The notes under the pieces were generated by a model. The model worked only from the letters and a program-made list of their open reading frames with translations. It had not been told where the DNA came from and did not search any database. A program made the position numbers and the translations under genes. Positions 10,478 through 24,373 of a stretch of DNA of 64,000 nt are shown here, in pieces. Position 1 is the stretch's first letter. Each line of letters opens with the position of its first letter. Where the stretch lies: the NCBI GenBank assembly GCA_965240325.2, contig OZ251245.1:1302001-1366000 (forward strand), written 5' to 3'. The stretch comes from Rebecca billardiae RCC1528. Its lineage: Eukaryota; Protista; Haptophyta.

Positions 10478-11481
10478 TCACAAGCAGGGCAGCATGCGCG
10501 CGAGCCAGCTGCCCTGCTGCGGCTTCTCAGCAGCGCGTGCACCGCCGACTGACTTGCGGTGAGTCCGCTGGTACGCCGCGCGCTCCTGGTCGATGGCGGG
10601 CTTCCGCGCCGGGTCGAGCAGGCTGTTCACGAGCGAGGCGTACTCGTACTCGTACCGCGCGAGGTCGTCCGCCTTCTTCTTGAAGACGGGCTCGGGCATG
10701 CCCATGCGGTCGCACGCCAGCGCGCGCTTGGCGTCGACCGACGGGCCGAGCCGGCGCAGCATGTGAGGGAAGTCGGACCAGGTGAACGACTTCATCATCT
10801 CCTGCTCGACCGGGCGGATCTCGTCGCGCTCGAACGCCCGCATCAGCTTGGGCAGCGTGTCCTCCTCCTCGTCCAGCAGGTGCGGCTCGATCAGCTCGCG
10901 GAATGTTCGGAGCTCCGGCTTGAGCGCGGCGCACGCGGCCGGCTCGCTCGCGGCCGCGACGAGCTTGTTGAGCGCGGTGAGGCTTGTGCTGAGGGCGCGG
11001 TGGTCCGCGACTATGTTATCGATGATCTCAACGCGCTCCTGCACCTTGGGGAAGAAGAGGCTGCGAGGTCGCAGGGGCGGGCGGGCGGGCGCCGCGACGG
11101 TGAGCGCACGCGCGCGCGGCCGAGCTCGCCGGCCGCGGCGATTCCAGCGGCGCCGTGGGGGCGGGCCCGCGCGCACTCTTCTTCGTGGCGGTGGTGGTGT
11201 ATGATGTATTCGGCCACGCGCGCCCACCACGCCACCAGGTACTCGTGCTCCCACGCCTCGACCGCGGCGGCGGCCGCGAGGCGCGCGACCACCTGCATCG
11301 TGTCCTCGAGGTCGGCGCGGATCGCGTCGTGGGAGAGGACCCAGCCGTTGTCCTTGGGCGCGGCCCAGTCGTTCCGCGGCTCCACGCGCCACTCCCGCTC
11401 GACCGGCGCGCTCTGGTGCTGCAGCGACGGCGGAGCCGCCTCGTTGGGCTTCGGGAGGCCCACCTCGAACTGCTCCCCCAT
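10478..11481 (-). CDS. Hemerythrin-like (HHE cation-binding) domain protein; exons 11481-11177, 11060-10478
   Basis: Ligand pattern SHDAIR...HHHRHEED|LFFP...DH...HLLDEEEDTLP. Intron 11176-11061 (GT-AG) joins HHRHEED to LFFP. Confidence 0.85.
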
Positions 11482-11815
11482 CCTGGCTGCTTGACTGAGT
11501 TGTAAGTTGTTGCTGTGTGCAGTGGCGCAGCGCGCGGCCGCGCGCTGCGCCGCTTGGCGAGCGCGGGTCTCCGGATGCAACGACGTGGCTTGTGATTGGC
11601 TGCTCGCTGCAAGGCGCGTACAGCGCGCCGAATCGCGGGCCGGAACAAGGGGGTTCTGATTGAACCCCCTTGGCCGGAACAACCGAAAGAGTCCGCGAAA
11701 GCGCATCCGTTGATGAATATGCTGTGCCCTGATTTCGATGACGCTCGCTCATATTCGTCGTTGAAAAAGCGCTTGGCCGCAATGCCGCCCGCATGCGCTT
11801 ACGGCGCGCGCGGCC

Positions 11816-14431
11816 CTACTGCAGCTTGGAGCAGTCGACGCCGGCGCGCACGAGCGCGCCGAGCACAACAGGCATGTAGAGCGCGTCCCACAGGTGCGCG
11901 CCCGCGATGCCGACGTGCCACAGCTGGTGGCTGTGCCCCCACACGTCGAAGCGGCCGGGCGCGAGCCGCTCGGGCCACTTGGTGACGTAGAAGACGAGCG
12001 CCGTGCCAAAGGAGAGGTACGAGCCGAGCACGGAGCCGAGCACCGGGCCGTGCTCGCCCACGCCCCCCAATGCGTACATGAGCGACGCCTGCGGCAGCAC
12101 GTTGCACACGCTGAACACGAAGACCATGCCGAGCACGCGGTGCGCCTCCTTGGCCGCCGAGAGCGTCACGGTCACGGACACGCAGCACGCGCCCGCGGCG
12201 AGCATCCAGAACATGGCGCGCCGCTCGGCGGTGGTGCACATGAGCGCGGCGTACCCGAAGCGCAGGCAGTACGCGTACATCCCGACGCAGATGAACGTGA
12301 AGTCGAGCTTCCACCACAGCCGGTAGTGCCGCATCGACTCGTTGTAGAAGGTGTGCGCGAGCGCGGACGCGAGCAGCTGCGAGGTCTGCAGCGCGGCGGC
12401 GAAGGCCGAGGCGAAGCGCAGCTCGGCGGGCGCATCGGCGAGGTGCCGCGCGTGCACCGCGGCGTACGCCGCGGGCAGCAGCACCGCGGGCAGCAGGTGC
12501 GTCCACACCGCCACCGTCTGGTTGTGCAGCGCAAACAGAGACGCGCCGTTCTGCCGCGCGCTGAAGTTCTCGCGGTACCCCGAGAGGATGTACTCCTCCT
12601 CGGGCATCCACTTGAGCTCCTCCACGCGTACGAGCGGCGGGCACGCCCACGCGCTGCGCGCCGCCGCGCCGCCGCGCTCGCGCCGCCGCGTCGGCGCCGC
12701 GTCGGCGCGTGCGGGCGCGCGCGCGGGCGCTGGCAGCGCGAGCTCGGCGGCCTCGACGCTCGACGCCCTCGGCGGATCGGCGGGGCGCGCGTGTGGGCTG
12801 GCCGCGGCCGAGCTCAGCCGCTGCAGGCGCCCCGCCCACACCCGGTCGATCGGCGTGTTGCCCGTCGCCGACTGCGACATGACGAACTCGAACGTGCGTG
12901 AGCCGCGCACGTGCGCCGGGCTGACGGCGAGTGCGTCCGCGTGCGAGCCGCCCCAGCGGCTGGGGATCGGTGCGGGGAGCACGGCCCCCGCGCGGCCGCT
13001 GCCCGCGGAGGAGGTGCTGCTGGAGCGGCGCGGCGTGGGCGGGGAGAGGTGCACACGCGGCCAGCTCGAGCTCAGCTCGCCGCCCGGCGCGGCGCTCGCC
13101 GACGCGGCGCGCGGATGGCGGCTGGGCAGCGGGTCAGTGAGGCACACGGCTTGGGGCAGCTGCAGCTCAGGCAGGATGCTCACGCGCACGCCGCCCGGAC
13201 CCAGGGGGGCGTCGTCGAGGTCGCGGCGCTCGGCGCCGACGGCCTCGGCCGGGCGCGCCGACGCCTCAGCTCGCGCGCCCGCAGCGCTCGGCAGCGGCTC
13301 GAGCGGCGGCGCGGCGGCCGTGCGCGCCGCGCCCGCCTGCGCCTCCTGACCGTCCGGCGCGGGCTCGGCCCCGTGCGCGGCCCACTCGAGCGCCGCCGCG
13401 CGCGCCGTCATGCGCGGCGCCACGAGCCACGCGTGGCACAGCTCGTCGACCAGCGCCAGCACGTCGACGGTGTGCGCGCCGTGCCGCCACGCGCCGCTGA
13501 GCGCCGTGCGCGCGTAGTACGCGCGCTGCGCGGCCGAGAGCAGCCCGGAGGCGACGCGCACGGGGTGGACGGCGTTGCGCACGGCGGGCTGCTCCATCAC
13601 GCGGTCGTACATCGTGTCGAACACTGCGCGCGCCGCGACGAGCCGCGCGTGCGCCGCCTTCGCGATGAAGAGCGCCGTGGGCGCGTACAGCGACAGTGCG
13701 TACAGCGAGGGCCACGGCTGCGGCCACGGCCCGTCCGCGCTCGCGTACTGCACGCTGGGCACGGCGTGGAGCACGTGGCGCACGGCGGGCAGGCCGGTCG
13801 AGCCGATCGCGATCGCGCCAAGCCCGACCAGCGCCATCGAGTACGCCGCGGGCAGCTCGCCCTGCAGCAGCGCCATGTCGACGAAGGCGGCCATGCCCCA
13901 CGTGGATGCGTGCGAGATGAACGCGACACCCGGCAGGTTGGCGGCGGCGTACGCGAGGAGCCAGCCGTCGAGGCGCGTGAGGAAGGTCTCGTCGGCGTAG
14001 AGGGCGAGCTTGACGAAGAAGAGCACGTTCGCCACGCACACCGCCGTGCGTAGCCCCACGTCCAGCGCGGACGCCTCGCGGAACCACGCGGACACCATCG
14101 ACACGAGCACCGCCACCAAGTAGATCAGGATGGCCTGCTTGGCCTGCTCGACGCGGTGCTCGGCGTTGACGCGCGCGAAGCACATGTCGCGGACGGGCTG
14201 CGCGACGGCCTTGCGCACGAGCCGCTCCCAGTTGGTGACGGCGCTCTCGCCGGCGCGCGCGCTCGGCTCGCACGCGGTGCTGCGCGGCGGCGAGAGCGAA
14301 TACAGCGCTGAGCCGTGCGACGAGAGCGGCGAGCTCGACGCCATCGACGGGTCGGTGAGGGTGCTCTGGGACATAGGGGTCCTATTGACCGAGCTGATGG
14401 GCGCGTTGGAGGGCGGCATCCTGGAGCCCAT
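11816..14431 (-). CDS. PAQR / hemolysin-III (adiponectin-receptor-like) protein with a long N-terminal multi-TM extension, 871 aa
   Basis: C-terminal motifs EEYILSGYR, LHNQTVAVWTH, SALAHTF, KLDFTFI, WPERLAPGRFDVWGHSHQLWH are typical of PAQR. Confidence 0.9.
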   Translation of the reverse strand: MGSRMPPSNAPISSVNRTPMSQSTLTDPSMASSSPLSSHGSALYSLSPPRSTACEPSARAGESAVTNWERLVRKAVAQPVRDMCFARVNAEHRVEQAKQAILIYLVAVLVSMVSAWFREASALDVGLRTAVCVANVLFFVKLALYADETFLTRLDGWLLAYAAANLPGVAFISHASTWGMAAFVDMALLQGELPAAYSMALVGLGAIAIGSTGLPAVRHVLHAVPSVQYASADGPWPQPWPSLYALSLYAPTALFIAKAAHARLVAARAVFDTMYDRVMEQPAVRNAVHPVRVASGLLSAAQRAYYARTALSGAWRHGAHTVDVLALVDELCHAWLVAPRMTARAAALEWAAHGAEPAPDGQEAQAGAARTAAAPPLEPLPSAAGARAEASARPAEAVGAERRDLDDAPLGPGGVRVSILPELQLPQAVCLTDPLPSRHPRAASASAAPGGELSSSWPRVHLSPPTPRRSSSTSSAGSGRAGAVLPAPIPSRWGGSHADALAVSPAHVRGSRTFEFVMSQSATGNTPIDRVWAGRLQRLSSAAASPHARPADPPRASSVEAAELALPAPARAPARADAAPTRRRERGGAAARSAWACPPLVRVEELKWMPEEEYILSGYRENFSARQNGASLFALHNQTVAVWTHLLPAVLLPAAYAAVHARHLADAPAELRFASAFAAALQTSQLLASALAHTFYNESMRHYRLWWKLDFTFICVGMYAYCLRFGYAALMCTTAERRAMFWMLAAGACCVSVTVTLSAAKEAHRVLGMVFVFSVCNVLPQASLMYALGGVGEHGPVLGSVLGSYLSFGTALVFYVTKWPERLAPGRFDVWGHSHQLWHVGIAGAHLWDALYMPVVLGALVRAGVDCSKLQ

Positions 14432-18211: not shown

Positions 18212-19195
18212 TCAGGCCGGCTGCGGCGTCTCCGCCGCGCCCTGCTGCGCTCGGCTCGCCGCCGAAGGCGTGAGCGCACGAGGCGCGGGGCTCGGCGGCG
18301 CGCGCTTGAGGCTGCCGCTGCCCCCGAGCAGGCCGAGCACAGACTGGCCGACCCCGTGCCCAAAACTGCGGCCGCCGACGGTGGCGGCGTCGGCGGGCTC
18401 GTGCGCGCCGTCGGCGCGGGCGCGCGGCGACGCGGACGCCGGCCCTGGCGTGCGCGGCTGCCACCGCCGGCTCCGGTGGCTGCGGCCGGAGCTGCTGTCG
18501 CCCGCCTCGGGGCCGATCCGCGCGCGCGCGCCGCCCCTTCTCGCCAGCAGCTCTGGCAGCCCGAGGGAGAAGCCGAGGCCGCGGCCGGCGCCGTCGTCGC
18601 CCTCGGCGCGGCGCATCGTGACGAGCGTGCGCTCGAACTGCTCGGCGAGCGAGGGGCGCTTCTGCCCCTGCTCGGAGGGCGGCGAGCCCGAGCGCTGCGT
18701 GCCCCGCCGGTGCCCCGAGCTGCGCGTGAGCCGCGCGCGCACGCCGCCCATCAGCTTGCCGCCGCGCACGCCCGTGCTCGTGACGCGCGGCTCGTCGCCG
18801 CCCGCCTCCGACGCGCCGCTCGCGCGCCCGCGCTGCTTGTGCACGGCGCGCCGCCGCGCCTCGAGCTCCTCGAGCCGCTCGATCATCGAGCCGAAGAGCT
18901 CCGCGGGGAACACGCCCTCCCTGTCCGCGCGCACCAGCCCCTGCACGCGCTGCCCCGACGGGCTGAGCGCGTTGTGCAGCGCCAGCGCCCACAGCCCGAC
19001 CACCATGTCCACGAGCAGCGGCTTGTCCGACACGTGCGAGAAGTCGCCGTCGAAGACCTGCGCGCAGGGGCGCGCGCGGCGCGCGGCGCGCGGCGCGGGC
19101 GGTGGGCGGCGGGCCCGCCGGCTGCCAGCTCGGGCCGAGGCCGCGCGCGGCCGCGCGGCCTCGGCGGTCTGCCGGCCGCGTGTGGGGCTCGGGCT

Positions 19196-19230
<35 letters not shown>

Positions 19231-22200
19231 CGGCGCGCGAGGGTGCGCGCGGCCGCGCACGTGTATGGCGTCGTGCCACCAGTCCTGCTGCTCGTCGCTC
19301 AGCACGACGAGCGGCTGCTCGCCGCCGTCGGCCAGGAACATCCGCGCCGTGCCCGCCGTCGCGAGGTGCGCCCACTGCTCGAGCCGGCACCAGCCGCGGC
19401 GCGCGTAGCTCTGCACGTCGCAGCGCGCGCCCGAGTCGTGGTGTGCGCACGGCGGCGCGACGACCACAAAGTAGCGCGCGGCGGAGGCGTACGTGGCGAG
19501 CGAGGAGATCGAGCCGAGCTTGAGCGCGTCGTTCGCCTGCGGGATCGAGAAGTAGTCCATCTGCCGGCGGCACGGGCCGGGGGCGCGTGCGTGCGCTCTC
19601 GCGTCGGTGCACAGCTCGCGGGAATCTGACGTCTGACGTGACGGCGGCGCGCGCGCGCGGCCGAGCGCGCGGGCGCGCGCGAGGCGCGCGCGCCGTGTGC
19701 GCACACCCAGACGTGGAGCTCGTTGGGGTGCAGGTCCTCGCGCACGCAGAGCGCGTGCAGCGCGCGCAGCACCGCGGGGTAGTGCACGCCGTCCGGGTCG
19801 GGCTCCGCATCGCCCAGCCACTGCGAGCGAGCGCACGGCGCACGGCGCACGGCGCACGGCGCACGGCGCACGGCGCACGGCGCGGCATGGCGGCGCGGCC
19901 GCAAAGCGCGCGGCCGCGCGGGCGGGGGAGGGCGCGCCGTGTGAGCACCGAACGCGCGAGCGCGCGCCGCCCGCGTGCCACGCACCTGGTGGCTGACGAA
20001 CACCACGCTCTTCCGCTCCGAGAAGTCGGCGAGGTGCTGCGCCGTGTCGATGAATAATAAATCGCCGCGGTCGCGCGCCTCCTCGTGCGACAGCAGCCGC
20101 CCGTGCGCGCGCAACGCCTCGAGGCGGACGAGGGCGGCGGGGAAGCGGAGGCGGTTGATGAAGCGGGTCGCCTCGATGATCCGCTCGTCCTGCTGCCGCC
20201 GCAGCACCTCCTGCGAGCGCAGCACCTTCTTCACGCGCGCCCACGCGCGGTGGAGTCCGCACGCACACAGCAGCACGCCCACGAGACACGCGGCGACGAT
20301 GATCAGCGTCATCAGCTGCCGGGTGAGCTGCTCGAGCTCCGCCTCGCGCCGGGAGCGCTCGGCGTCGTCGGAGGCGCCGTCGGACTCGTCCTCCCCGCCG
20401 CCGCCGCGCCCGCCCTCGCCCGCCTCGCCCGCCTCCTCCGCCGAGCCGTCGTGGGGCGGCAGCGCGCCCCCGTCCGCGTACAGGAACGGCTGCGCCAGCG
20501 CCCACGCGCCGCCGCTGAAGGTGCCCACGCGCGGCGCGGCGAGGGCGGGGACGGGCGCGGCGGGGGCGGAGACGAGGCGCAGGTTGAGCAGCTCGAACGC
20601 GCTCGCCCCGCGCGCGCGGTCGCCCTTCTCGTCCAGCGCCACCGTCCCCGTCAGCCCGTCGAACCCGCCCTCCGCCAGCAGCCGGCCCCACCAGCGCCCG
20701 CCGCCAAAGTCGACGCGCCCGTCGGCCGCGCGCGAGGCGTTGCACGCGGCGAGGGCGACGGTGGCGACGGCGTCGTACGCGAAGGCGTCGATGGCCTCGA
20801 GGGGCCACGCCTCGAAGAAGTCGGGCTCGAGCGCCGCCTCCGCCGGCACCAGCTGCCGCAGCTCGGGCGTGTCGAAGCCGCCGCTCGCCCAGCCTCGCGC
20901 AAACGACTCCCAGCGCGCGGACCCCGGCACGCCGCCGAGCGCGCGCACGTTGGCGGCGCCCGCGACGGCGCGCGCGAGCTCGGGCTCGTCGGCGAGCGCG
21001 ATGAGCTGCGACGCGCGCAGCGCGCCGCTGAACACCCAGTGGTGCGTGCCCGCCGCCGCGCCCCCCGCCAGCCCGTGCGCCAGCGCCGCGTGCAGCAGCG
21101 GCCGCAGCGCCGAGGCACTGACCACCGCGACCACAAATCGAACGTCCGCGGCAGCGAGCCTCGCCATGGCGGCGTCGAGGCCGGCGGCGTCGGACGGCTC
21201 GAAGGGGGCGCGGACGAGCGCGATGCCGAGGTCGGCGCAGTGCACCGACAGCGCCTCGGCGTACCCCTGCCCGTACACGTTGCTCATGAACGCCACGCCC
21301 GCGCGCCGCGCGCCCGAGGCCCGCAGCCAGAGGGCGAGCGCGTACGCGGCCGCCTCGTCCGAGGGGATGGTGCGCGCGAAGGTCGGGAGGTCGTCGGCGT
21401 TGGAGAGCGTGGGCGAGGTGGAGCGGTGCGAGACCTGCGGCATGCCGTCGATCGCGGCGAGCTGCGCCACCGCCTCGCTCACCGCCGAGCGGCTCGCCCC
21501 CACGAGCGCGCCCCAGCCCCTGCGCCTGCCCTCCAGGTACGCCTCCAGCCCGACGATGGGCGATGCGCGCGTGTGCCCCAGCCCGAGCTCGATGCGCACG
21601 TCGCAGCCGGCGGGCGCGGCGGCGGCGAAGGCGGGGACGTACGTGCCGTTGCGCCCGTTGAAGTGCATCGCCGCGAGCTGCGCCGCCATCATCGCGCTGC
21701 GCGACGTCGTGTCGCTCGCGCTCTCGCCCGCCCAGCGGCCCAGGAAGCCGACGCGCAGCAGCGTGCCGCGCGCGCCCTCCTCGGCCGGCTGCGTGCGGCC
21801 GGCGGCGAAGGTGAAGGGGGGCGGCGGGTCGGTGGAGGTGGCGGAGGCCTGCGGCACGCCGTTCACGTACGTCCCCGCCTGCCGCAGCCGCAGCAGCGCG
21901 TCGCCCTCGCCGCCCGCCTCCGCGACCACGTTGCCCAGGTCGTACGGAACGGCCTCGGCGCGCCGCCCGCCCGTGTCAGGGTCAAACGCGACGCGGCCGG
22001 TGAGCCCGTCGTACTCGAGGGCGGAGAGCGCGGCGAGGAGGGCGGGCGGCGAGGCGGGCGTCGCGGTGCTGCACGCCGCGACGCCCAGCGCCACGCCCGC
22101 GTCGTACGCGAACGCGAGCAGGTCGTCCTGCGCCGAGACGCTCCTGTTGGCGCGCGCGGACGGCGGCAGCGCGCCGCCGAGCGCCTCGCGCGGCGCGGCG

Positions 22201-23150
22201 CGCCACGTGGCCACGAAGGCGGCGAAGCGGCCGTCGGCGTTGGCGGAGGGCTCGATGCGCGCGGCGCCGTCGAGCAGGCGCAGCAGCGGCGCGTCCGCCT
22301 CCGCCTCCATCAGCCAGCCCACCGTCAGCGCGTTCGTCACCACCACGTGCCCGTCGGGGCCGGCGACGCCCGCGTCGGCCGCCGCGCGCGCGAGCGCGTG
22401 CATGTGCCGCCCAAACGCGCCGACGATCAGCACGCGCAGCGGCTCGCCGTCGAGCGAGAGCATGCCGGCCATCGCGGCGCGCATCGAGTCGGCCGGCGCG
22501 CCGTCCAGCCCCTCCTCCGCGTCGAACCGCGCGCTCGTCAGCGCCACGTTCCCCACCGCCGCCGCGTCGGCGAGCGCGGCCGCCAGCCCGTCGCCGTACG
22601 CGTCGCCCACGTGCACGAGCCCGACCTCGGACCAGCCGTACCGCCGGATGTGCGCGAGGATGGCGCGGGCGAGCGAGCTGTCGGAGGGCATCATGCGCCG
22701 GAGGTACGGGTACCGCGCCACGTCGTCGAGCACGGGCGACGACGCGACGGGCGAGAGCTGCACGAGCGGCAGCAGCGCGCCGTACGTCGCCATCGCGCCG
22801 GTCGGCTGCGAGCGCACGCTGCCGAGCACGGCGGCGACGCCCGCGTCGGCGAGGCGGAAGATGGCGCGCGTGGCAGCGAGCGCGCTGTTCTGCGTGTCCG
22901 CCACCGCGGCCACGCGCAGCCGCACGTCGCACGCGGCCAGCGCCGAGCCGCCGAGCTCGCGCACGAGCGAGTCGTTGCGCGCGTTGAAATGGTCCACGCC
23001 GAGCAGCAGCGCGTAGGTGAGGTCGACCTTCTGCGCGTCGAGGGGCATGGCCACGCCGATGGGCAGCTCGGACGGCGCCACGGCCGGCGCGAGCACCGCC
23101 ACCGCCGCCACGAGCACCGCGGCGGGGCGGCGCCTGCTCCCGCTTGGCAT
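18212..23150 (-). CDS. Single-pass receptor-like protein, ~1474 aa: signal peptide + 2 Venus-flytrap (ANF-receptor/periplasmic-binding type I) domains + TM + TIR/HET-like domain; exons 23150-19986, 19820-19707, 19560-19261, 19057-18212
   Basis: VFT motifs twice (VLGSVRS...QLSPVASSPVLDDVARYPYLRRMMPSD; LVGASRS...QVSHRSTSPTLSNADDLPTFARTIPSD; GLTGRVAFD / GLTGTVALD). TM LMTLIIVAACLVGVLLCACGL. Three GT-AG introns give FVSHQ|WLGDAEPDPDG...LHVW|MDYFSIPQ...YARRGWCRLEQW...H|VFDGDFS. Confidence 0.85.
19831..19879. repeat. (GCGCACG)7 heptamer microsatellite in receptor intron 1
   Basis: Seen directly in the sequence. Confidence 0.9.
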
Positions 23151-24373
23151 GAGGGCTGGGAGTGCGACCCCTCGTCGTCGTCGGTGTAGCAATCTGTGAA
23201 TTGTGATGTTAGATAGCTACTTCCTCGGTCTTAACCGAACCCTGTAAGTACGGCAACCTCCCGTCTGAGACTTGCACGAGAGCCAGTATGCCGAGTTCGT
23301 CAATCGCGCGGCACACACGAGCACAGATTAATATTTCGCCCAATCGCAACGCGCCATTCTGCCCATTCAGTAGTACACCCTATATTCACAAGATGATTTA
23401 CAAACTGGTAACAACTAACAACCCGCAACGCGAAGCGCGGTACAGTTTACTATGATTTAACGTGCACACTTGGTTAAGGCGTGATTAACGCCATCCAACA
23501 CTGCACAAAGACACCGTAGAATGATCCTCGCCGCATTGATCATGTCCCCCTCCTTGCGTCGTCAGCCAACCCACTACCGACTCGCCATGCGCCCGCGCCG
23601 CCGATCGCACTTCACCGCTAAGCCGTTCTCCACACCCTCTGCGCTGCAAGACTCCCCGATGGCGCGCTGCACAGGCGGCGGATGGGAGTGCCGCGCCGGC
23701 GCGCGAGACGTTTCGCGTCCCCGGGGGCGGTCACTGTGAGGGGGCCAGGCGCGAGCTACCCTGAGGCCAACCACTGCCCTCTCACGTCAGCAGAGCGTGC
23801 AAGCCTGAATCGAGCCACGCACGCCCCTTGGCATCGCCATCGACGTGTGTGATGCGAGGTGCAGCGCCCCTCACGCGCGGCCGGCTCCGCAGCCACCGGT
23901 TCCGGCACGACCGCACGGCACGCGGCCGACCGGCATGGCGGGGCGGAGTGTGCGCGAGCAAGGAAGACCGACGCTTGCTCGGAGCAAAGGGGAGGGGCAA
24001 GGGATGCGAGGACGCTCACTCCACCACGCTACAGAGCCTGTGCCGAGGTCGGTCGCACATGCGGCCAAGGCCAGAGGCGCCAGCGCCATGCTGAGCTCTC
24101 CATCGATATGGCCAGGGTACTAGGGTAGGGATATGGGGGTAGTGTAGCACGATGAAAGATTCCGCGCCCGCCGCCGCGCGCCCGCCGCCGCCGCCGCCCG
24201 GCATACTTTATTTATTTTTAAAGGCTTTTTTGTGGATGACGACGAAGCGGGGGGGCAGCCGTCGTCGGCGGACGGCGGGATGCGCGCTCGCCCGTTGGAC
24301 GGCACCGAACGCGGACGGCCGCAGCTGATCATATCGACCGCTCGTCGTCCTCGACCGATCACGAATCTCGACC

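What the first reader, a model, noticed from the sequence alone, without database searches (positions are those of the whole stretch)
18212..23150. Small-molecule-sensing 'Toll-like' receptor: tandem Venus-flytrap ectodomain coupled to a TIR/HET-like domain with an intact catalytic motif
Seen: four exons splice through canonical GT-AG introns into signal peptide - VFT - VFT - one TM - a cytoplasmic domain reading FVSHQW...PDPDG...VWMDYFSIPQ...SLATYASAARYFVVVAP...YARRGWCRLE. The domain is split over three frames, so no single ORF shows it. Known: TIR domains begin F(I/V)S(Y/H), have a betaB (F/W)xD, and carry the catalytic Glu in WCxxE; fungal HET domains share SxxW...WxDxxCIxQ...RxWxxQE. VFT domains normally couple to 7TM (class C GPCR), ion-channel or guanylate-cyclase outputs. 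Inference: ligand-driven VFT closure or dimerisation clusters a TIR-like NAD+-cleaving or cell-death effector, giving an algal metabolite/danger receptor. I do not know this architecture from described receptors.
Basis: partly seen in the sequence, partly recalled or inferred. Interest (0 to 1): 0.9.

Follow-up and report, generated by a model that had tools for sequence, protein, structure and literature searches.

The report
Algal flytrap receptor with HET-like tail
This is a real, intact four-exon gene of a very GC-rich marine alga for a cell-surface receptor with two ligand-binding "Venus-flytrap" domains outside and, inside, a conserved domain distantly related to the fungal HET cell-death domain and immune TIR enzymes; it is one more member of a large, barely studied receptor family of marine protists.

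Summary
Its order is signal peptide, two ANF_receptor/VFT domains, one TM helix, a ~260-aa cytoplasmic domain and a low-complexity tail.

Protist homologues align across all three junctions without gaps at 40-47% identity. The window protein keeps all 16 invariant and 17 near-invariant family residues, including the Glu of RGWCRLE (E1154).

The cytoplasmic domain has no above-threshold Pfam match and is not a canonical TIR by sequence. It is a distant HET relative:
- 13 of 46 homologues give weak, colinear HET hits.
- Predicted fungal HET models superpose at TM 0.54-0.64.

The same domain ends receptors with Cache, solute-binding, FG-GAP and lectin-like ectodomains in haptophytes and dinoflagellates. 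This fits a general signalling output.

Biochemistry is untested. HET homologues in haptophytes (2014) and an ectodomain-TM-"TIR" receptor in Gephyrocapsa huxleyi (2025) are published. This scan had already noted at least six loci described with this architecture in this genome. It is a new member of a known but uncharacterised kind.

The parts
23058..23150 (-). Start codon and predicted signal peptide (aa 1-31, MPSGSRRRPAAVLVAAVAVLAPAVAPSELP)
   Evidence: First ATG of the long ORF; hydrophobic window at aa 9-31
21861..23033 (-). Venus-flytrap domain 1 (about aa 40-430)
   Evidence: ANF_receptor best stretch aa 79-392; PDB sequence hits to LivJ-like, mGluR and GABA-B2
20481..21773 (-). Venus-flytrap domain 2 (about aa 460-890)
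   Evidence: Second ANF_receptor/Peripla_BP_6 stretch; 31% identical to VFT1; PDB hits to CaSR and mGluR; 34% identical to the VFT of P0105
20253..20315 (-). Single transmembrane helix (aa 946-966, LMTLIIVAACLVGVLLCACGL), positive residues on the C-terminal side
   Evidence: Only strong hydrophobic window besides the signal peptide, KD 2.86
19986..20153 (-). HET-like domain, N-terminal part at the end of exon 1 (aa 1000-1055, ...HEE...FVSHQ)
   Evidence: Aligns with homologues; invariant H1022, E1023, F1051, S1053, H1054, Q1055
19821..19985 (-). Intron 1 (165 nt, GT..AG), contains a perfect GCGCACG x7.6 array
   Evidence: no homologue has residues here
19707..19820 (-). Exon 2 (aa 1056-1093, WLGDAEPDPDG...HVW)
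19561..19706 (-). Intron 2 (146 nt, GT..AG)
   Evidence: gap-free alignment across VW|MDY
19261..19560 (-). Exon 3 (aa 1094-1193): MDYFSIPQ block, third strand and the RGWCRLEQW helix
   Evidence: phmmer gives 1213 representative proteins at E<=1e-3 and 351 at E<=1e-10
19378..19380 (-). Codon GAG of E1154, the family-invariant Glu (E157 of alignment A1), candidate catalytic residue
   Evidence: Invariant in 46 of 46 homologues, retained here; lies in the helix after the third strand of the model
19058..19260 (-). Intron 3 (203 nt, GT..AG), mostly GC-rich 6-12-nt microsatellite arrays
   Evidence: gap-free alignment across AIH|VFDGDF
18857..19057 (-). HET-like domain, C-terminal helical part (aa 1194-1260, VFDGDFS..DK..LVD..GLW...VFP..FG)
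18212..18856 (-). Low-complexity Arg/Gly/Ala/Ser-rich C-terminal tail (aa 1261-1474) and stop codon
   Evidence: No Pfam family above threshold; one stop at the end

Best explanation
Shown: the locus encodes a type I single-pass receptor. Two class-C-GPCR/LivJ-type Venus-flytrap domains face outwards, and a ~260-aa cytoplasmic domain follows the TM helix. That domain belongs to a very large protist family that is a distant relative of fungal HET domains. Its core is a flavodoxin-like fold of the TIR / nucleoside-deoxyribosyltransferase type. The window protein keeps every invariant polar residue of the family: S, H, Q of FxSHQW; D of PDP; D of WxDY; Q of SIPQ; Y, R, R and E of Y..RGWCRLE. Inferred: binding of a small ligand (type unknown; an amino-acid-like molecule is a guess from the VFT class) closes or re-pairs the flytraps. 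This repositions or clusters the cytoplasmic domains. The domain then acts as an enzyme that uses the invariant Glu to cleave an N-glycosidic bond of NAD+ or another nucleotide, as TIR and deoxyribosyltransferase enzymes do. The product would be a soluble signal, or at high activity the substrate would be depleted. The same domain is the output of receptors with Cache, solute-binding-protein, CHASE, FG-GAP and lectin-like sensors and of soluble H-NOX and EF-hand proteins. I therefore read it as a general signalling output module of marine protists, not only a death effector.
Confidence: 0.5

Rival explanations
1. Adaptor model. The HET-like domain has no catalysis. Ligand-driven clustering nucleates homotypic HET-HET assemblies that recruit the many soluble HET-like proteins of the same organisms (LRR_6/NLRC3-like, ankyrin, MORN), as animal TLR TIRs recruit MyD88.
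For: Soluble family members with LRR_6, Ank and MORN repeats are abundant in haptophytes. Dyrka et al. 2014 proposed an adaptor role for HET (PMC4986451). MyD88, MAL and TIRAP TIR filaments are among the structural neighbours.
Against: Ten strictly invariant polar or charged residues are more typical of an active site than of an interface. The domain is also fused to classic one-component sensors (H-NOX, EF-hand, Cache), where an enzymatic output is the rule. Even animal TLR TIRs are now reported to be catalytic (bioRxiv 10.64898/2026.04.20.719644).
Confidence: 0.25
2. It is a bona fide TIR-family domain that makes cADPR-type messengers like plant, bacterial and animal TIRs.
For: SARM1 TIR is the top or joint-top solved neighbour. 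The WCxxE spacing matches the plant TIR motif (my own knowledge). G. huxleyi ectodomain-TM-'TIR' proteins are reported (PMC12489294).
Against: No TIR, TIR_2 or ThsB profile matches at E<=10 in 46 homologues, and profile searches hit no solved TIR. Fungal HET models match over ~190 residues including the N- and C-terminal extensions, whereas TIRs match only ~105 core residues.
Confidence: 0.1
3. It is a nutrient sensor or transceptor in which the conserved cytoplasmic domain does something unrelated to TIR/HET chemistry, such as trafficking, regulation or binding of a partner enzyme.
For: The ectodomain repertoire of the family is dominated by nutrient-type binding domains: VFT, phosphonate-binding, SBP_bac_8 and Cache. 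All fold matches are weak.
Against: The recurrent HET signal in sequence and structure and the invariant Glu-containing motif.
Confidence: 0.1
4. The gene model is an artefact, or the locus is an unexpressed pseudogene.
For: No RNA run was listed. At about 78% GC, long ORFs occur in all six frames.
Against: There is a single stop in 4425 nt after splicing. The introns are canonical and their junctions coincide with gap-free homology. All 33 conserved family positions are retained, and GC drops on both sides mark the gene borders.
Confidence: 0.03

Closest known systems
Fungal HET domain (Pfam PF06985; HET-E, HET-6, TOL, HET-B)
   Same: The three conserved blocks come in the same order, read directly as FxSHQW / WxDYxSIPQ / RGWCRLE against the HET blocks as I recall them. 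Weak colinear Pfam hits cover blocks 1-2. The predicted structures superpose over ~190 residues, including the extensions beyond the TIR-like core. HET homologues in Haptophyceae were already noted by Dyrka et al. 2014 (PMC4986451).
   Different: All four inspected hits are below Pfam's gathering score. The domain sits C-terminal to a TM helix in a surface receptor instead of N-terminal in a cytoplasmic NLR or lectin protein. It carries its own invariant set (H-E upstream, SHQW, PDP, SIPQ, Cys in WC). The organisms are protists, not fungi.
TIR domains (SARM1, plant TNLs, ThsB, TLR/MyD88)
   Same: Flavodoxin-like beta-alpha core. The invariant Glu sits in the helix after the third strand with W-x3-E spacing. 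The receptor layout of ectodomain, one TM helix and cytoplasmic domain is that of Toll-like receptors. SARM1 TIR is the top or joint-top solved neighbour.
G. huxleyi receptor-like 'TIR' proteins (cogent1101_i1; New Phytol 2025, PMC12489294)
   Same: A haptophyte protein with an extracellular region resembling leucine-binding and EGF-like domains, one TM helix and an intracellular TIR-type domain with a conserved Glu. The family member P0042 has exactly Peripla_BP_6 + EGF + this domain.
   Different: I could not obtain that sequence (no supplements held), so identity of the families is unproven. That protein was described with one binding region, whereas this one has two VFTs. Their evidence is transcriptional (early virus response), not biochemical.
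Class C GPCRs, natriuretic-peptide receptor guanylate cyclases and iGluR amino-terminal domains (other ANF_receptor/VFT receptors)
   Same: Same ligand-binding VFT fold, and the same logic of VFT closure or dimer rearrangement driving an intracellular output.
   Different: The output is neither a 7TM core, a cyclase/kinase-homology domain nor a channel. There are two VFTs in tandem in one chain and only one TM helix.
Nucleoside 2'-deoxyribosyltransferase / MilB N-glycosidases

Membership tests
ANF_receptor / Venus-flytrap (PF01094, PF13458) | Profile match above the curated threshold, bilobed periplasmic-binding-protein type I domain | tested here: met
   ANF_receptor E 3.3e-57 (194.6 bits against cut-off 25.4) in two stretches, and Peripla_BP_6 at 68.5 bits. 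Both halves hit mGluR, CaSR, GABA-B and LivJ-like structures.
Fungal HET domain (PF06985) | Pfam profile match at or above the gathering score (22.5 bits) | tested here: not met
   The window's exons give no hit. Of 46 homologue domains, 13 hit HET (best E 4.3e-4). The four I inspected scored 12.6-17.0 bits, below the cut-off.
Fungal HET domain (PF06985) | Three conserved blocks in order (block 1 ..S..W.; block 2 W.D..CI.Q; block 3 RGW..QE) | tested here: inconclusive
   Blocks 1 and 2 align colinearly with HET profile positions 5-84 of 146. Block 3 (RGWCRLE) was not covered by any HMM alignment; its equivalence rests on reading the motif and on PMC4986451.
Fungal HET domain (PF06985) | Same fold as fungal HET models over the whole ~220-240-aa domain | tested here: met
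   The Ascomycota HET cluster (PF06985 in 100% of members) gives TM 0.54/0.50 over 186 aa. An Ascomycota TPR-NLR cluster gives TM 0.64 over 192 aa at rmsd 2.8. Both sides are predictions and the scores are moderate.
Fungal HET domain (PF06985) | Induces cell death when overexpressed | not testable with these tools
   Requires expression in a cell.
TIR domain (PF01582 / PF13676; NADase TIRs) | Sequence or profile similarity to TIR families or solved TIRs | tested here: not met
   No TIR family at E<=10 in Pfam, PADLOC or NCBIfam for 46 homologues. Profiles A1 and A3 hit no TIR chain in the PDB.
TIR domain (PF01582 / PF13676; NADase TIRs) | Flavodoxin-like TIR fold as a clear best structural match | tested here: inconclusive
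TIR domain (PF01582 / PF13676; NADase TIRs) | Catalytic Glu on helix alphaC facing the BB-loop pocket | tested here: inconclusive
   An invariant Glu (E157 of A1, E1154 here) lies in the helix after the third strand. Offset arithmetic against the SARM1 561-675 alignment range is compatible with E642, but no residue-level superposition was available.
TIR domain (PF01582 / PF13676; NADase TIRs) | NAD+ cleavage or cADPR-isomer production | not testable with these tools
   Biochemical assay needed.
Toll-like receptors | LRR ectodomain + one TM helix + cytoplasmic TIR | tested here: not met
   The ectodomain is 2 x VFT with no LRR. The cytoplasmic domain is HET-like, not TIR by sequence. Only the topology is shared.
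Class C GPCR | VFT followed by a 7TM domain | tested here: not met
   One TM segment only and no 7tm_3 hit.

The most novel reading that the evidence does not exclude
The HET-like domain is a ligand-gated, Glu-dependent nucleotide/NAD+-processing enzyme that serves marine protists as a general second-messenger generator. It would be functionally analogous to cyclases or histidine kinases, wired to VFT, Cache, CHASE, SBP, GPCR and H-NOX sensors. This receptor would then convert an extracellular small molecule directly into an NAD-derived intracellular signal. That would also give the first biochemical function for the HET superfamily.
Probability: 0.3. Interest if true: 0.85.

Novelty: new member of a known kind. 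Interest (0 to 1): 0.58.

Why it matters
How HET domains work is still undetermined after 25 years (PMC10890737, PMC12881547). Haptophytes and dinoflagellates drive ocean blooms, yet their surface receptors are almost unknown. A family of more than a thousand sequence clusters joins small-molecule sensor domains to one HET/TIR-like output. It offers soluble, compact, highly conserved domains (predicted at pLDDT above 93) for a direct test of HET biochemistry. It also offers candidate receptors for nutrient, infochemical or virus sensing in phytoplankton. This locus adds one clean, intact, fully annotated example, not a new principle.

Tried and rejected
- **Word-index protein searches.** Searches with exon 1 (whole, and aa 960-1055) returned nothing. 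The first is probably swamped by Ala-rich words. Both blanks are uninformative under the tool's length and word limits.
- **RNA-seq.** No run was listed.
- **Pfam on single exons and on the unspliced ORF.** No family for the cytoplasmic part.
- **PDB sequence and profile searches.** Only chance-level hits: CdiI, protein A, OST6.
- **PADLOC and NCBIfam.** Nothing recurrent.
- **Foldseek against the PDB.** With the whole and the core model, no match at E<0.001. Primase TOPRIM and lumazine synthase hits were rejected as generic alpha/beta similarity, with TM below 0.42 and rmsd 8.4-12.6.
- **Related loci in prokaryotic genomes and viral contigs.** Motif matches only, no relatives. The first attempt with A1 failed for lack of a conserved stretch.
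- **Second copy or partner gene in the window.** None found. The neighbours are unrelated: a HlyIII/PAQR-like and a hemerythrin-domain ORF.
- **Supplementary tables of PMC12489294.** Not held, so I could not test whether its 'TIR' receptors are this family.
- **P0013.** This 1499-aa butterfly-assembly protein with 23 matched stretches was set aside as repetitive or contaminant.
Full report
**1. The observation**

The region is about 78% GC and is bounded by GC dips at 16.5-18.0 kb and 23.0-23.5 kb. At this composition long ORFs appear in all six frames, so ORF length alone means nothing here.

Joining minus-strand exons 23150-19986, 19820-19707, 19560-19261 and 19057-18212 gives 4425 nt, which is 1474 codons and one terminal stop. 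The introns are 165, 146 and 203 nt, and each runs GT...AG.

No RNA-seq run could be listed for this stretch. None was listed, which is not the same as none exists. I therefore tested the splice model by homology:
- A phmmer search of exon 3 alone against 1.84 billion representative proteins gave 1213 hits at E<=1e-3 and 351 at E<=1e-10.
- The spliced residues 1000-1260 align end to end with these proteins. The best is P0003, an MMETSP transcript, at 47.5% identity over 265 columns and E 4e-79.
- In a 13-sequence alignment there is no gap at any of the three junctions: FVSHQ|WLG, HVW|MDYF and AIH|VFDGDF.
- tblastn of homologues against the window recovers the four exon pieces separately and finds no second copy.
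- Intron 1 is in frame and open, but retaining it would put 55 residues into the invariant SHQW motif. No homologue does this.

**2. Anatomy**

- Residues 1-31 look like a signal peptide.
- Pfam finds ANF_receptor (E 3.3e-57, two stretches) and Peripla_BP_6 in exon 1.
- The two halves are 31% identical to each other over 157 residues (E 4e-14).
- Each half hits solved VFTs of mGluR, CaSR, GABA-B2 and bacterial LivJ-like proteins.
- There is one strong hydrophobic segment, aa 946-966, followed by HRAWARVKK. Apart from the signal peptide there is no other, so the protein is type I single-pass.
- A ~260-aa conserved cytoplasmic domain follows (aa ~1000-1260).
- The last ~215 residues form a low-complexity tail with no family match.

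**3. What the cytoplasmic domain is**

Conservation. In an alignment of 46 full-length domains from the hits (A1), sixteen columns are invariant. Those in the recognisable motifs are: the E of an upstream H-E; F, S, H, Q and W of FxSHQW; the D of PDP; the D of WxDY; P and Q of SIPQ; and Y, R, W, R and E of Y..RGWCRLE. The window protein keeps all 16 invariant and all 17 near-invariant positions. The Glu is E1154, codon 19380-19378.

Sequence searches:
- Pfam gives no hit above threshold.
- 13 of the 46 domains hit HET (PF06985; best E 4.3e-4). Every other family appears only once, and no TIR family appears at all.
- The inspected HET hits are colinear, for example domain residues 54-126 against HET profile positions 5-84 of 146. 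They score 12.6-17.0 bits, below the 22.5-bit cut-off.
- Profile searches of the PDB, PADLOC and NCBIfam find nothing meaningful.

Predicted structure. AlphaFold2 on A1 gives a very confident model (pLDDT 95.3, pTM 0.91). The core-only model has pLDDT 93.2. The order of elements in the core is:
1. strand (FVSHQW)
2. long loop (PDP)
3. helix
4. strand (VWxDY)
5. loop (SIPQ)
6. two helices
7. strand (FVVVAP)
8. hairpin
9. helix carrying Y..RGWCRLEQW
10. strand
11. helix

Structural comparisons:
- Against predicted structures, an Ascomycota cluster that is 100% PF06985 superposes at TM 0.54/0.50 over 186 residues. A fungal TPR-NLR cluster superposes at TM 0.64 over 192 residues with rmsd 2.8.
- HET-6 and HET-E-1 are among the top Swiss-Prot model hits, although only at E about 0.05.
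- Sixteen of the top 50 are TIR, SEFIR or ThsB, and at least eight are NDT/MilB enzymes.

My reading is that this is a HET-superfamily domain whose core has the TIR/NDT-type flavodoxin-like fold. It is not a TIR-family member by any sequence criterion. This agrees with Dyrka et al. 2014 (PMC4986451), who found HET homologues in Haptophyceae, including E. huxleyi, and found HET-TIR similarity over three blocks up to helix alphaC.

The position of E1154 in the helix after the third strand is where TIRs carry their catalytic Glu. Simple offset arithmetic on the SARM1 alignment range (model 5-151 against SARM1 561-675) is compatible with E642. I could not obtain a residue-level superposition, so this step is inference.

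**4. The family**

In AFDB the domain matches uncharacterised proteins of haptophytes and dinoflagellates at TM ~0.9. Some are automatically named 'Heterokaryon incompatibility domain-containing', 'Receptor ligand binding region', 'Cache domain' or 'CHASE domain'.

Pfam scans of 23 long homologues show the N-terminal parts below:

| N-terminal part | Members |
|---|---|
| ANF_receptor / Peripla_BP_6 | seven; P0097 has two VFTs like this gene, P0042 adds an EGF |
| Cache | three |
| FG-GAP | two |
| Laminin_G_3 + Big_9 | two |
| Phosphonate-binding + ephrin-receptor-like | one |
| SBP_bac_8 | one |
| Beta-helix | one |
| NCD3G | one |
| EF-hand only | one |
| Multicopper oxidase / cytochrome b561 / peroxidase / DOMON giant | one |
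| No Pfam family | three |

Soluble members carry LRR_6 (NLRC3-like), ankyrin, MORN, EF-hand or H-NOX.

Named sources include Prymnesium parvum ('Leucine-binding protein domain-containing protein'), P. polylepis, Isochrysis galbana, Haptolina ericina, Alexandrium catenella and Symbiodinium. An intron-less VFT member sits on Tara Oceans scaffolds beside a nuclear-type PetC gene. No relatives were found in prokaryotic genomes or viral contigs with the family's two strongest motifs.

**5. Mechanism**

Shown:
- the receptor topology;
- intact sensor and output domains;
- HET relatedness;
- a TIR/NDT-like core;
- an invariant polar constellation.

Inferred:
- Ligand-induced VFT closure or rearrangement changes the spacing or oligomeric state of the cytoplasmic domains.
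- The domains then act enzymatically through the invariant Glu on NAD+ or another nucleotide.

I prefer an enzymatic signalling output (about 0.5) to a pure adaptor (about 0.25) for two reasons. Ten polar residues are strictly invariant at ~35% pairwise identity. The domain also replaces the usual enzymatic outputs behind H-NOX, Cache, CHASE, SBP and VFT sensors.

No HET domain has a determined activity or structure (PMC10890737; table in PMC12881547). Canonical TIRs of several protists were recently shown to be NADases (bioRxiv 10.64898/2026.04.20.719644). The ligand cannot be assigned from sequence.

**6. Novelty**

- The domain's presence in haptophytes and its HET/TIR affinity were published in 2014 (PMC4986451).
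- A 2025 study of Gephyrocapsa huxleyi describes a gene with an extracellular region resembling leucine-binding and EGF-like domains, one TM helix and an intracellular 'TIR' with a conserved Glu. The gene is induced within 0.5 h of virus addition (PMC12489294). This is the architecture of family member P0042, although I could not check the sequence.
- Full-text searches found no paper on VFT-TIR or VFT-HET receptors otherwise.
- Earlier notes of this scan report at least six other loci in this same genome that they describe as flytrap ectodomain + TM + HET-like output. They also report H-NOX, GPCR and BMP fusions to the domain. I did not inspect those loci. My independent results on this locus agree with their reading.

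The locus is therefore a new, cleanly annotated member of a known but functionally uncharacterised kind. The family as a whole remains interesting because it could make HET biochemistry and phytoplankton chemoreception experimentally tractable.

Noticed in passing
window 19831-19883 and 19070-19257: Intron 1 holds a perfect 7-nt array (GCGCACG x7.6). Intron 3 consists almost entirely of GC-rich 6-12-nt microsatellite arrays. Such arrays inside short introns may be a feature of this genome.
   Followed up: no
window 11816-14431 (-) and 10478-11794 (-): The downstream neighbours are an 871-aa ORF ending in a HlyIII/PAQR-type 7TM domain (E 6.4e-31) after a ~630-aa N-terminal extension without a family, and an ORF with a weak hemerythrin-domain hit.
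   Followed up: partly
L001:2307-5522 (Tara Oceans scaffold; protein P0079): This is an intron-less 1071-aa VFT + TM + HET-like gene. Its 25-member cluster is found on many marine metagenome contigs. It lies next to a nuclear-type PetC Rieske gene and a PDZ protein, so it probably comes from a compact picoeukaryote genome.
   Followed up: partly
protein P0127 (Prymnesium parvum KAL1499200.1, 2731 aa): A giant protein combines multicopper oxidase, cytochrome b561, three peroxidase stretches and two DOMON domains with the HET-like domain at its C-terminus. A redox-sensing or redox-active receptor is possible.
   Followed up: no
protein P0013 (CAH2040116.1, Iphiclides podalirius assembly, 1499 aa): A butterfly-assembly protein matched exon 3 in 23 separate stretches centred on the RGWCRLE region. 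It is either a repeated fragment or contamination.
   Followed up: no
window 19299-23192 (-): The mechanical ORF reads in frame through intron 1 and exon 2, because intron 1 is 165 nt and open. An ORF-based gene caller would therefore predict a 1297-aa protein with a disrupted SHQW motif and a frameshifted tail.
   Followed up: yes
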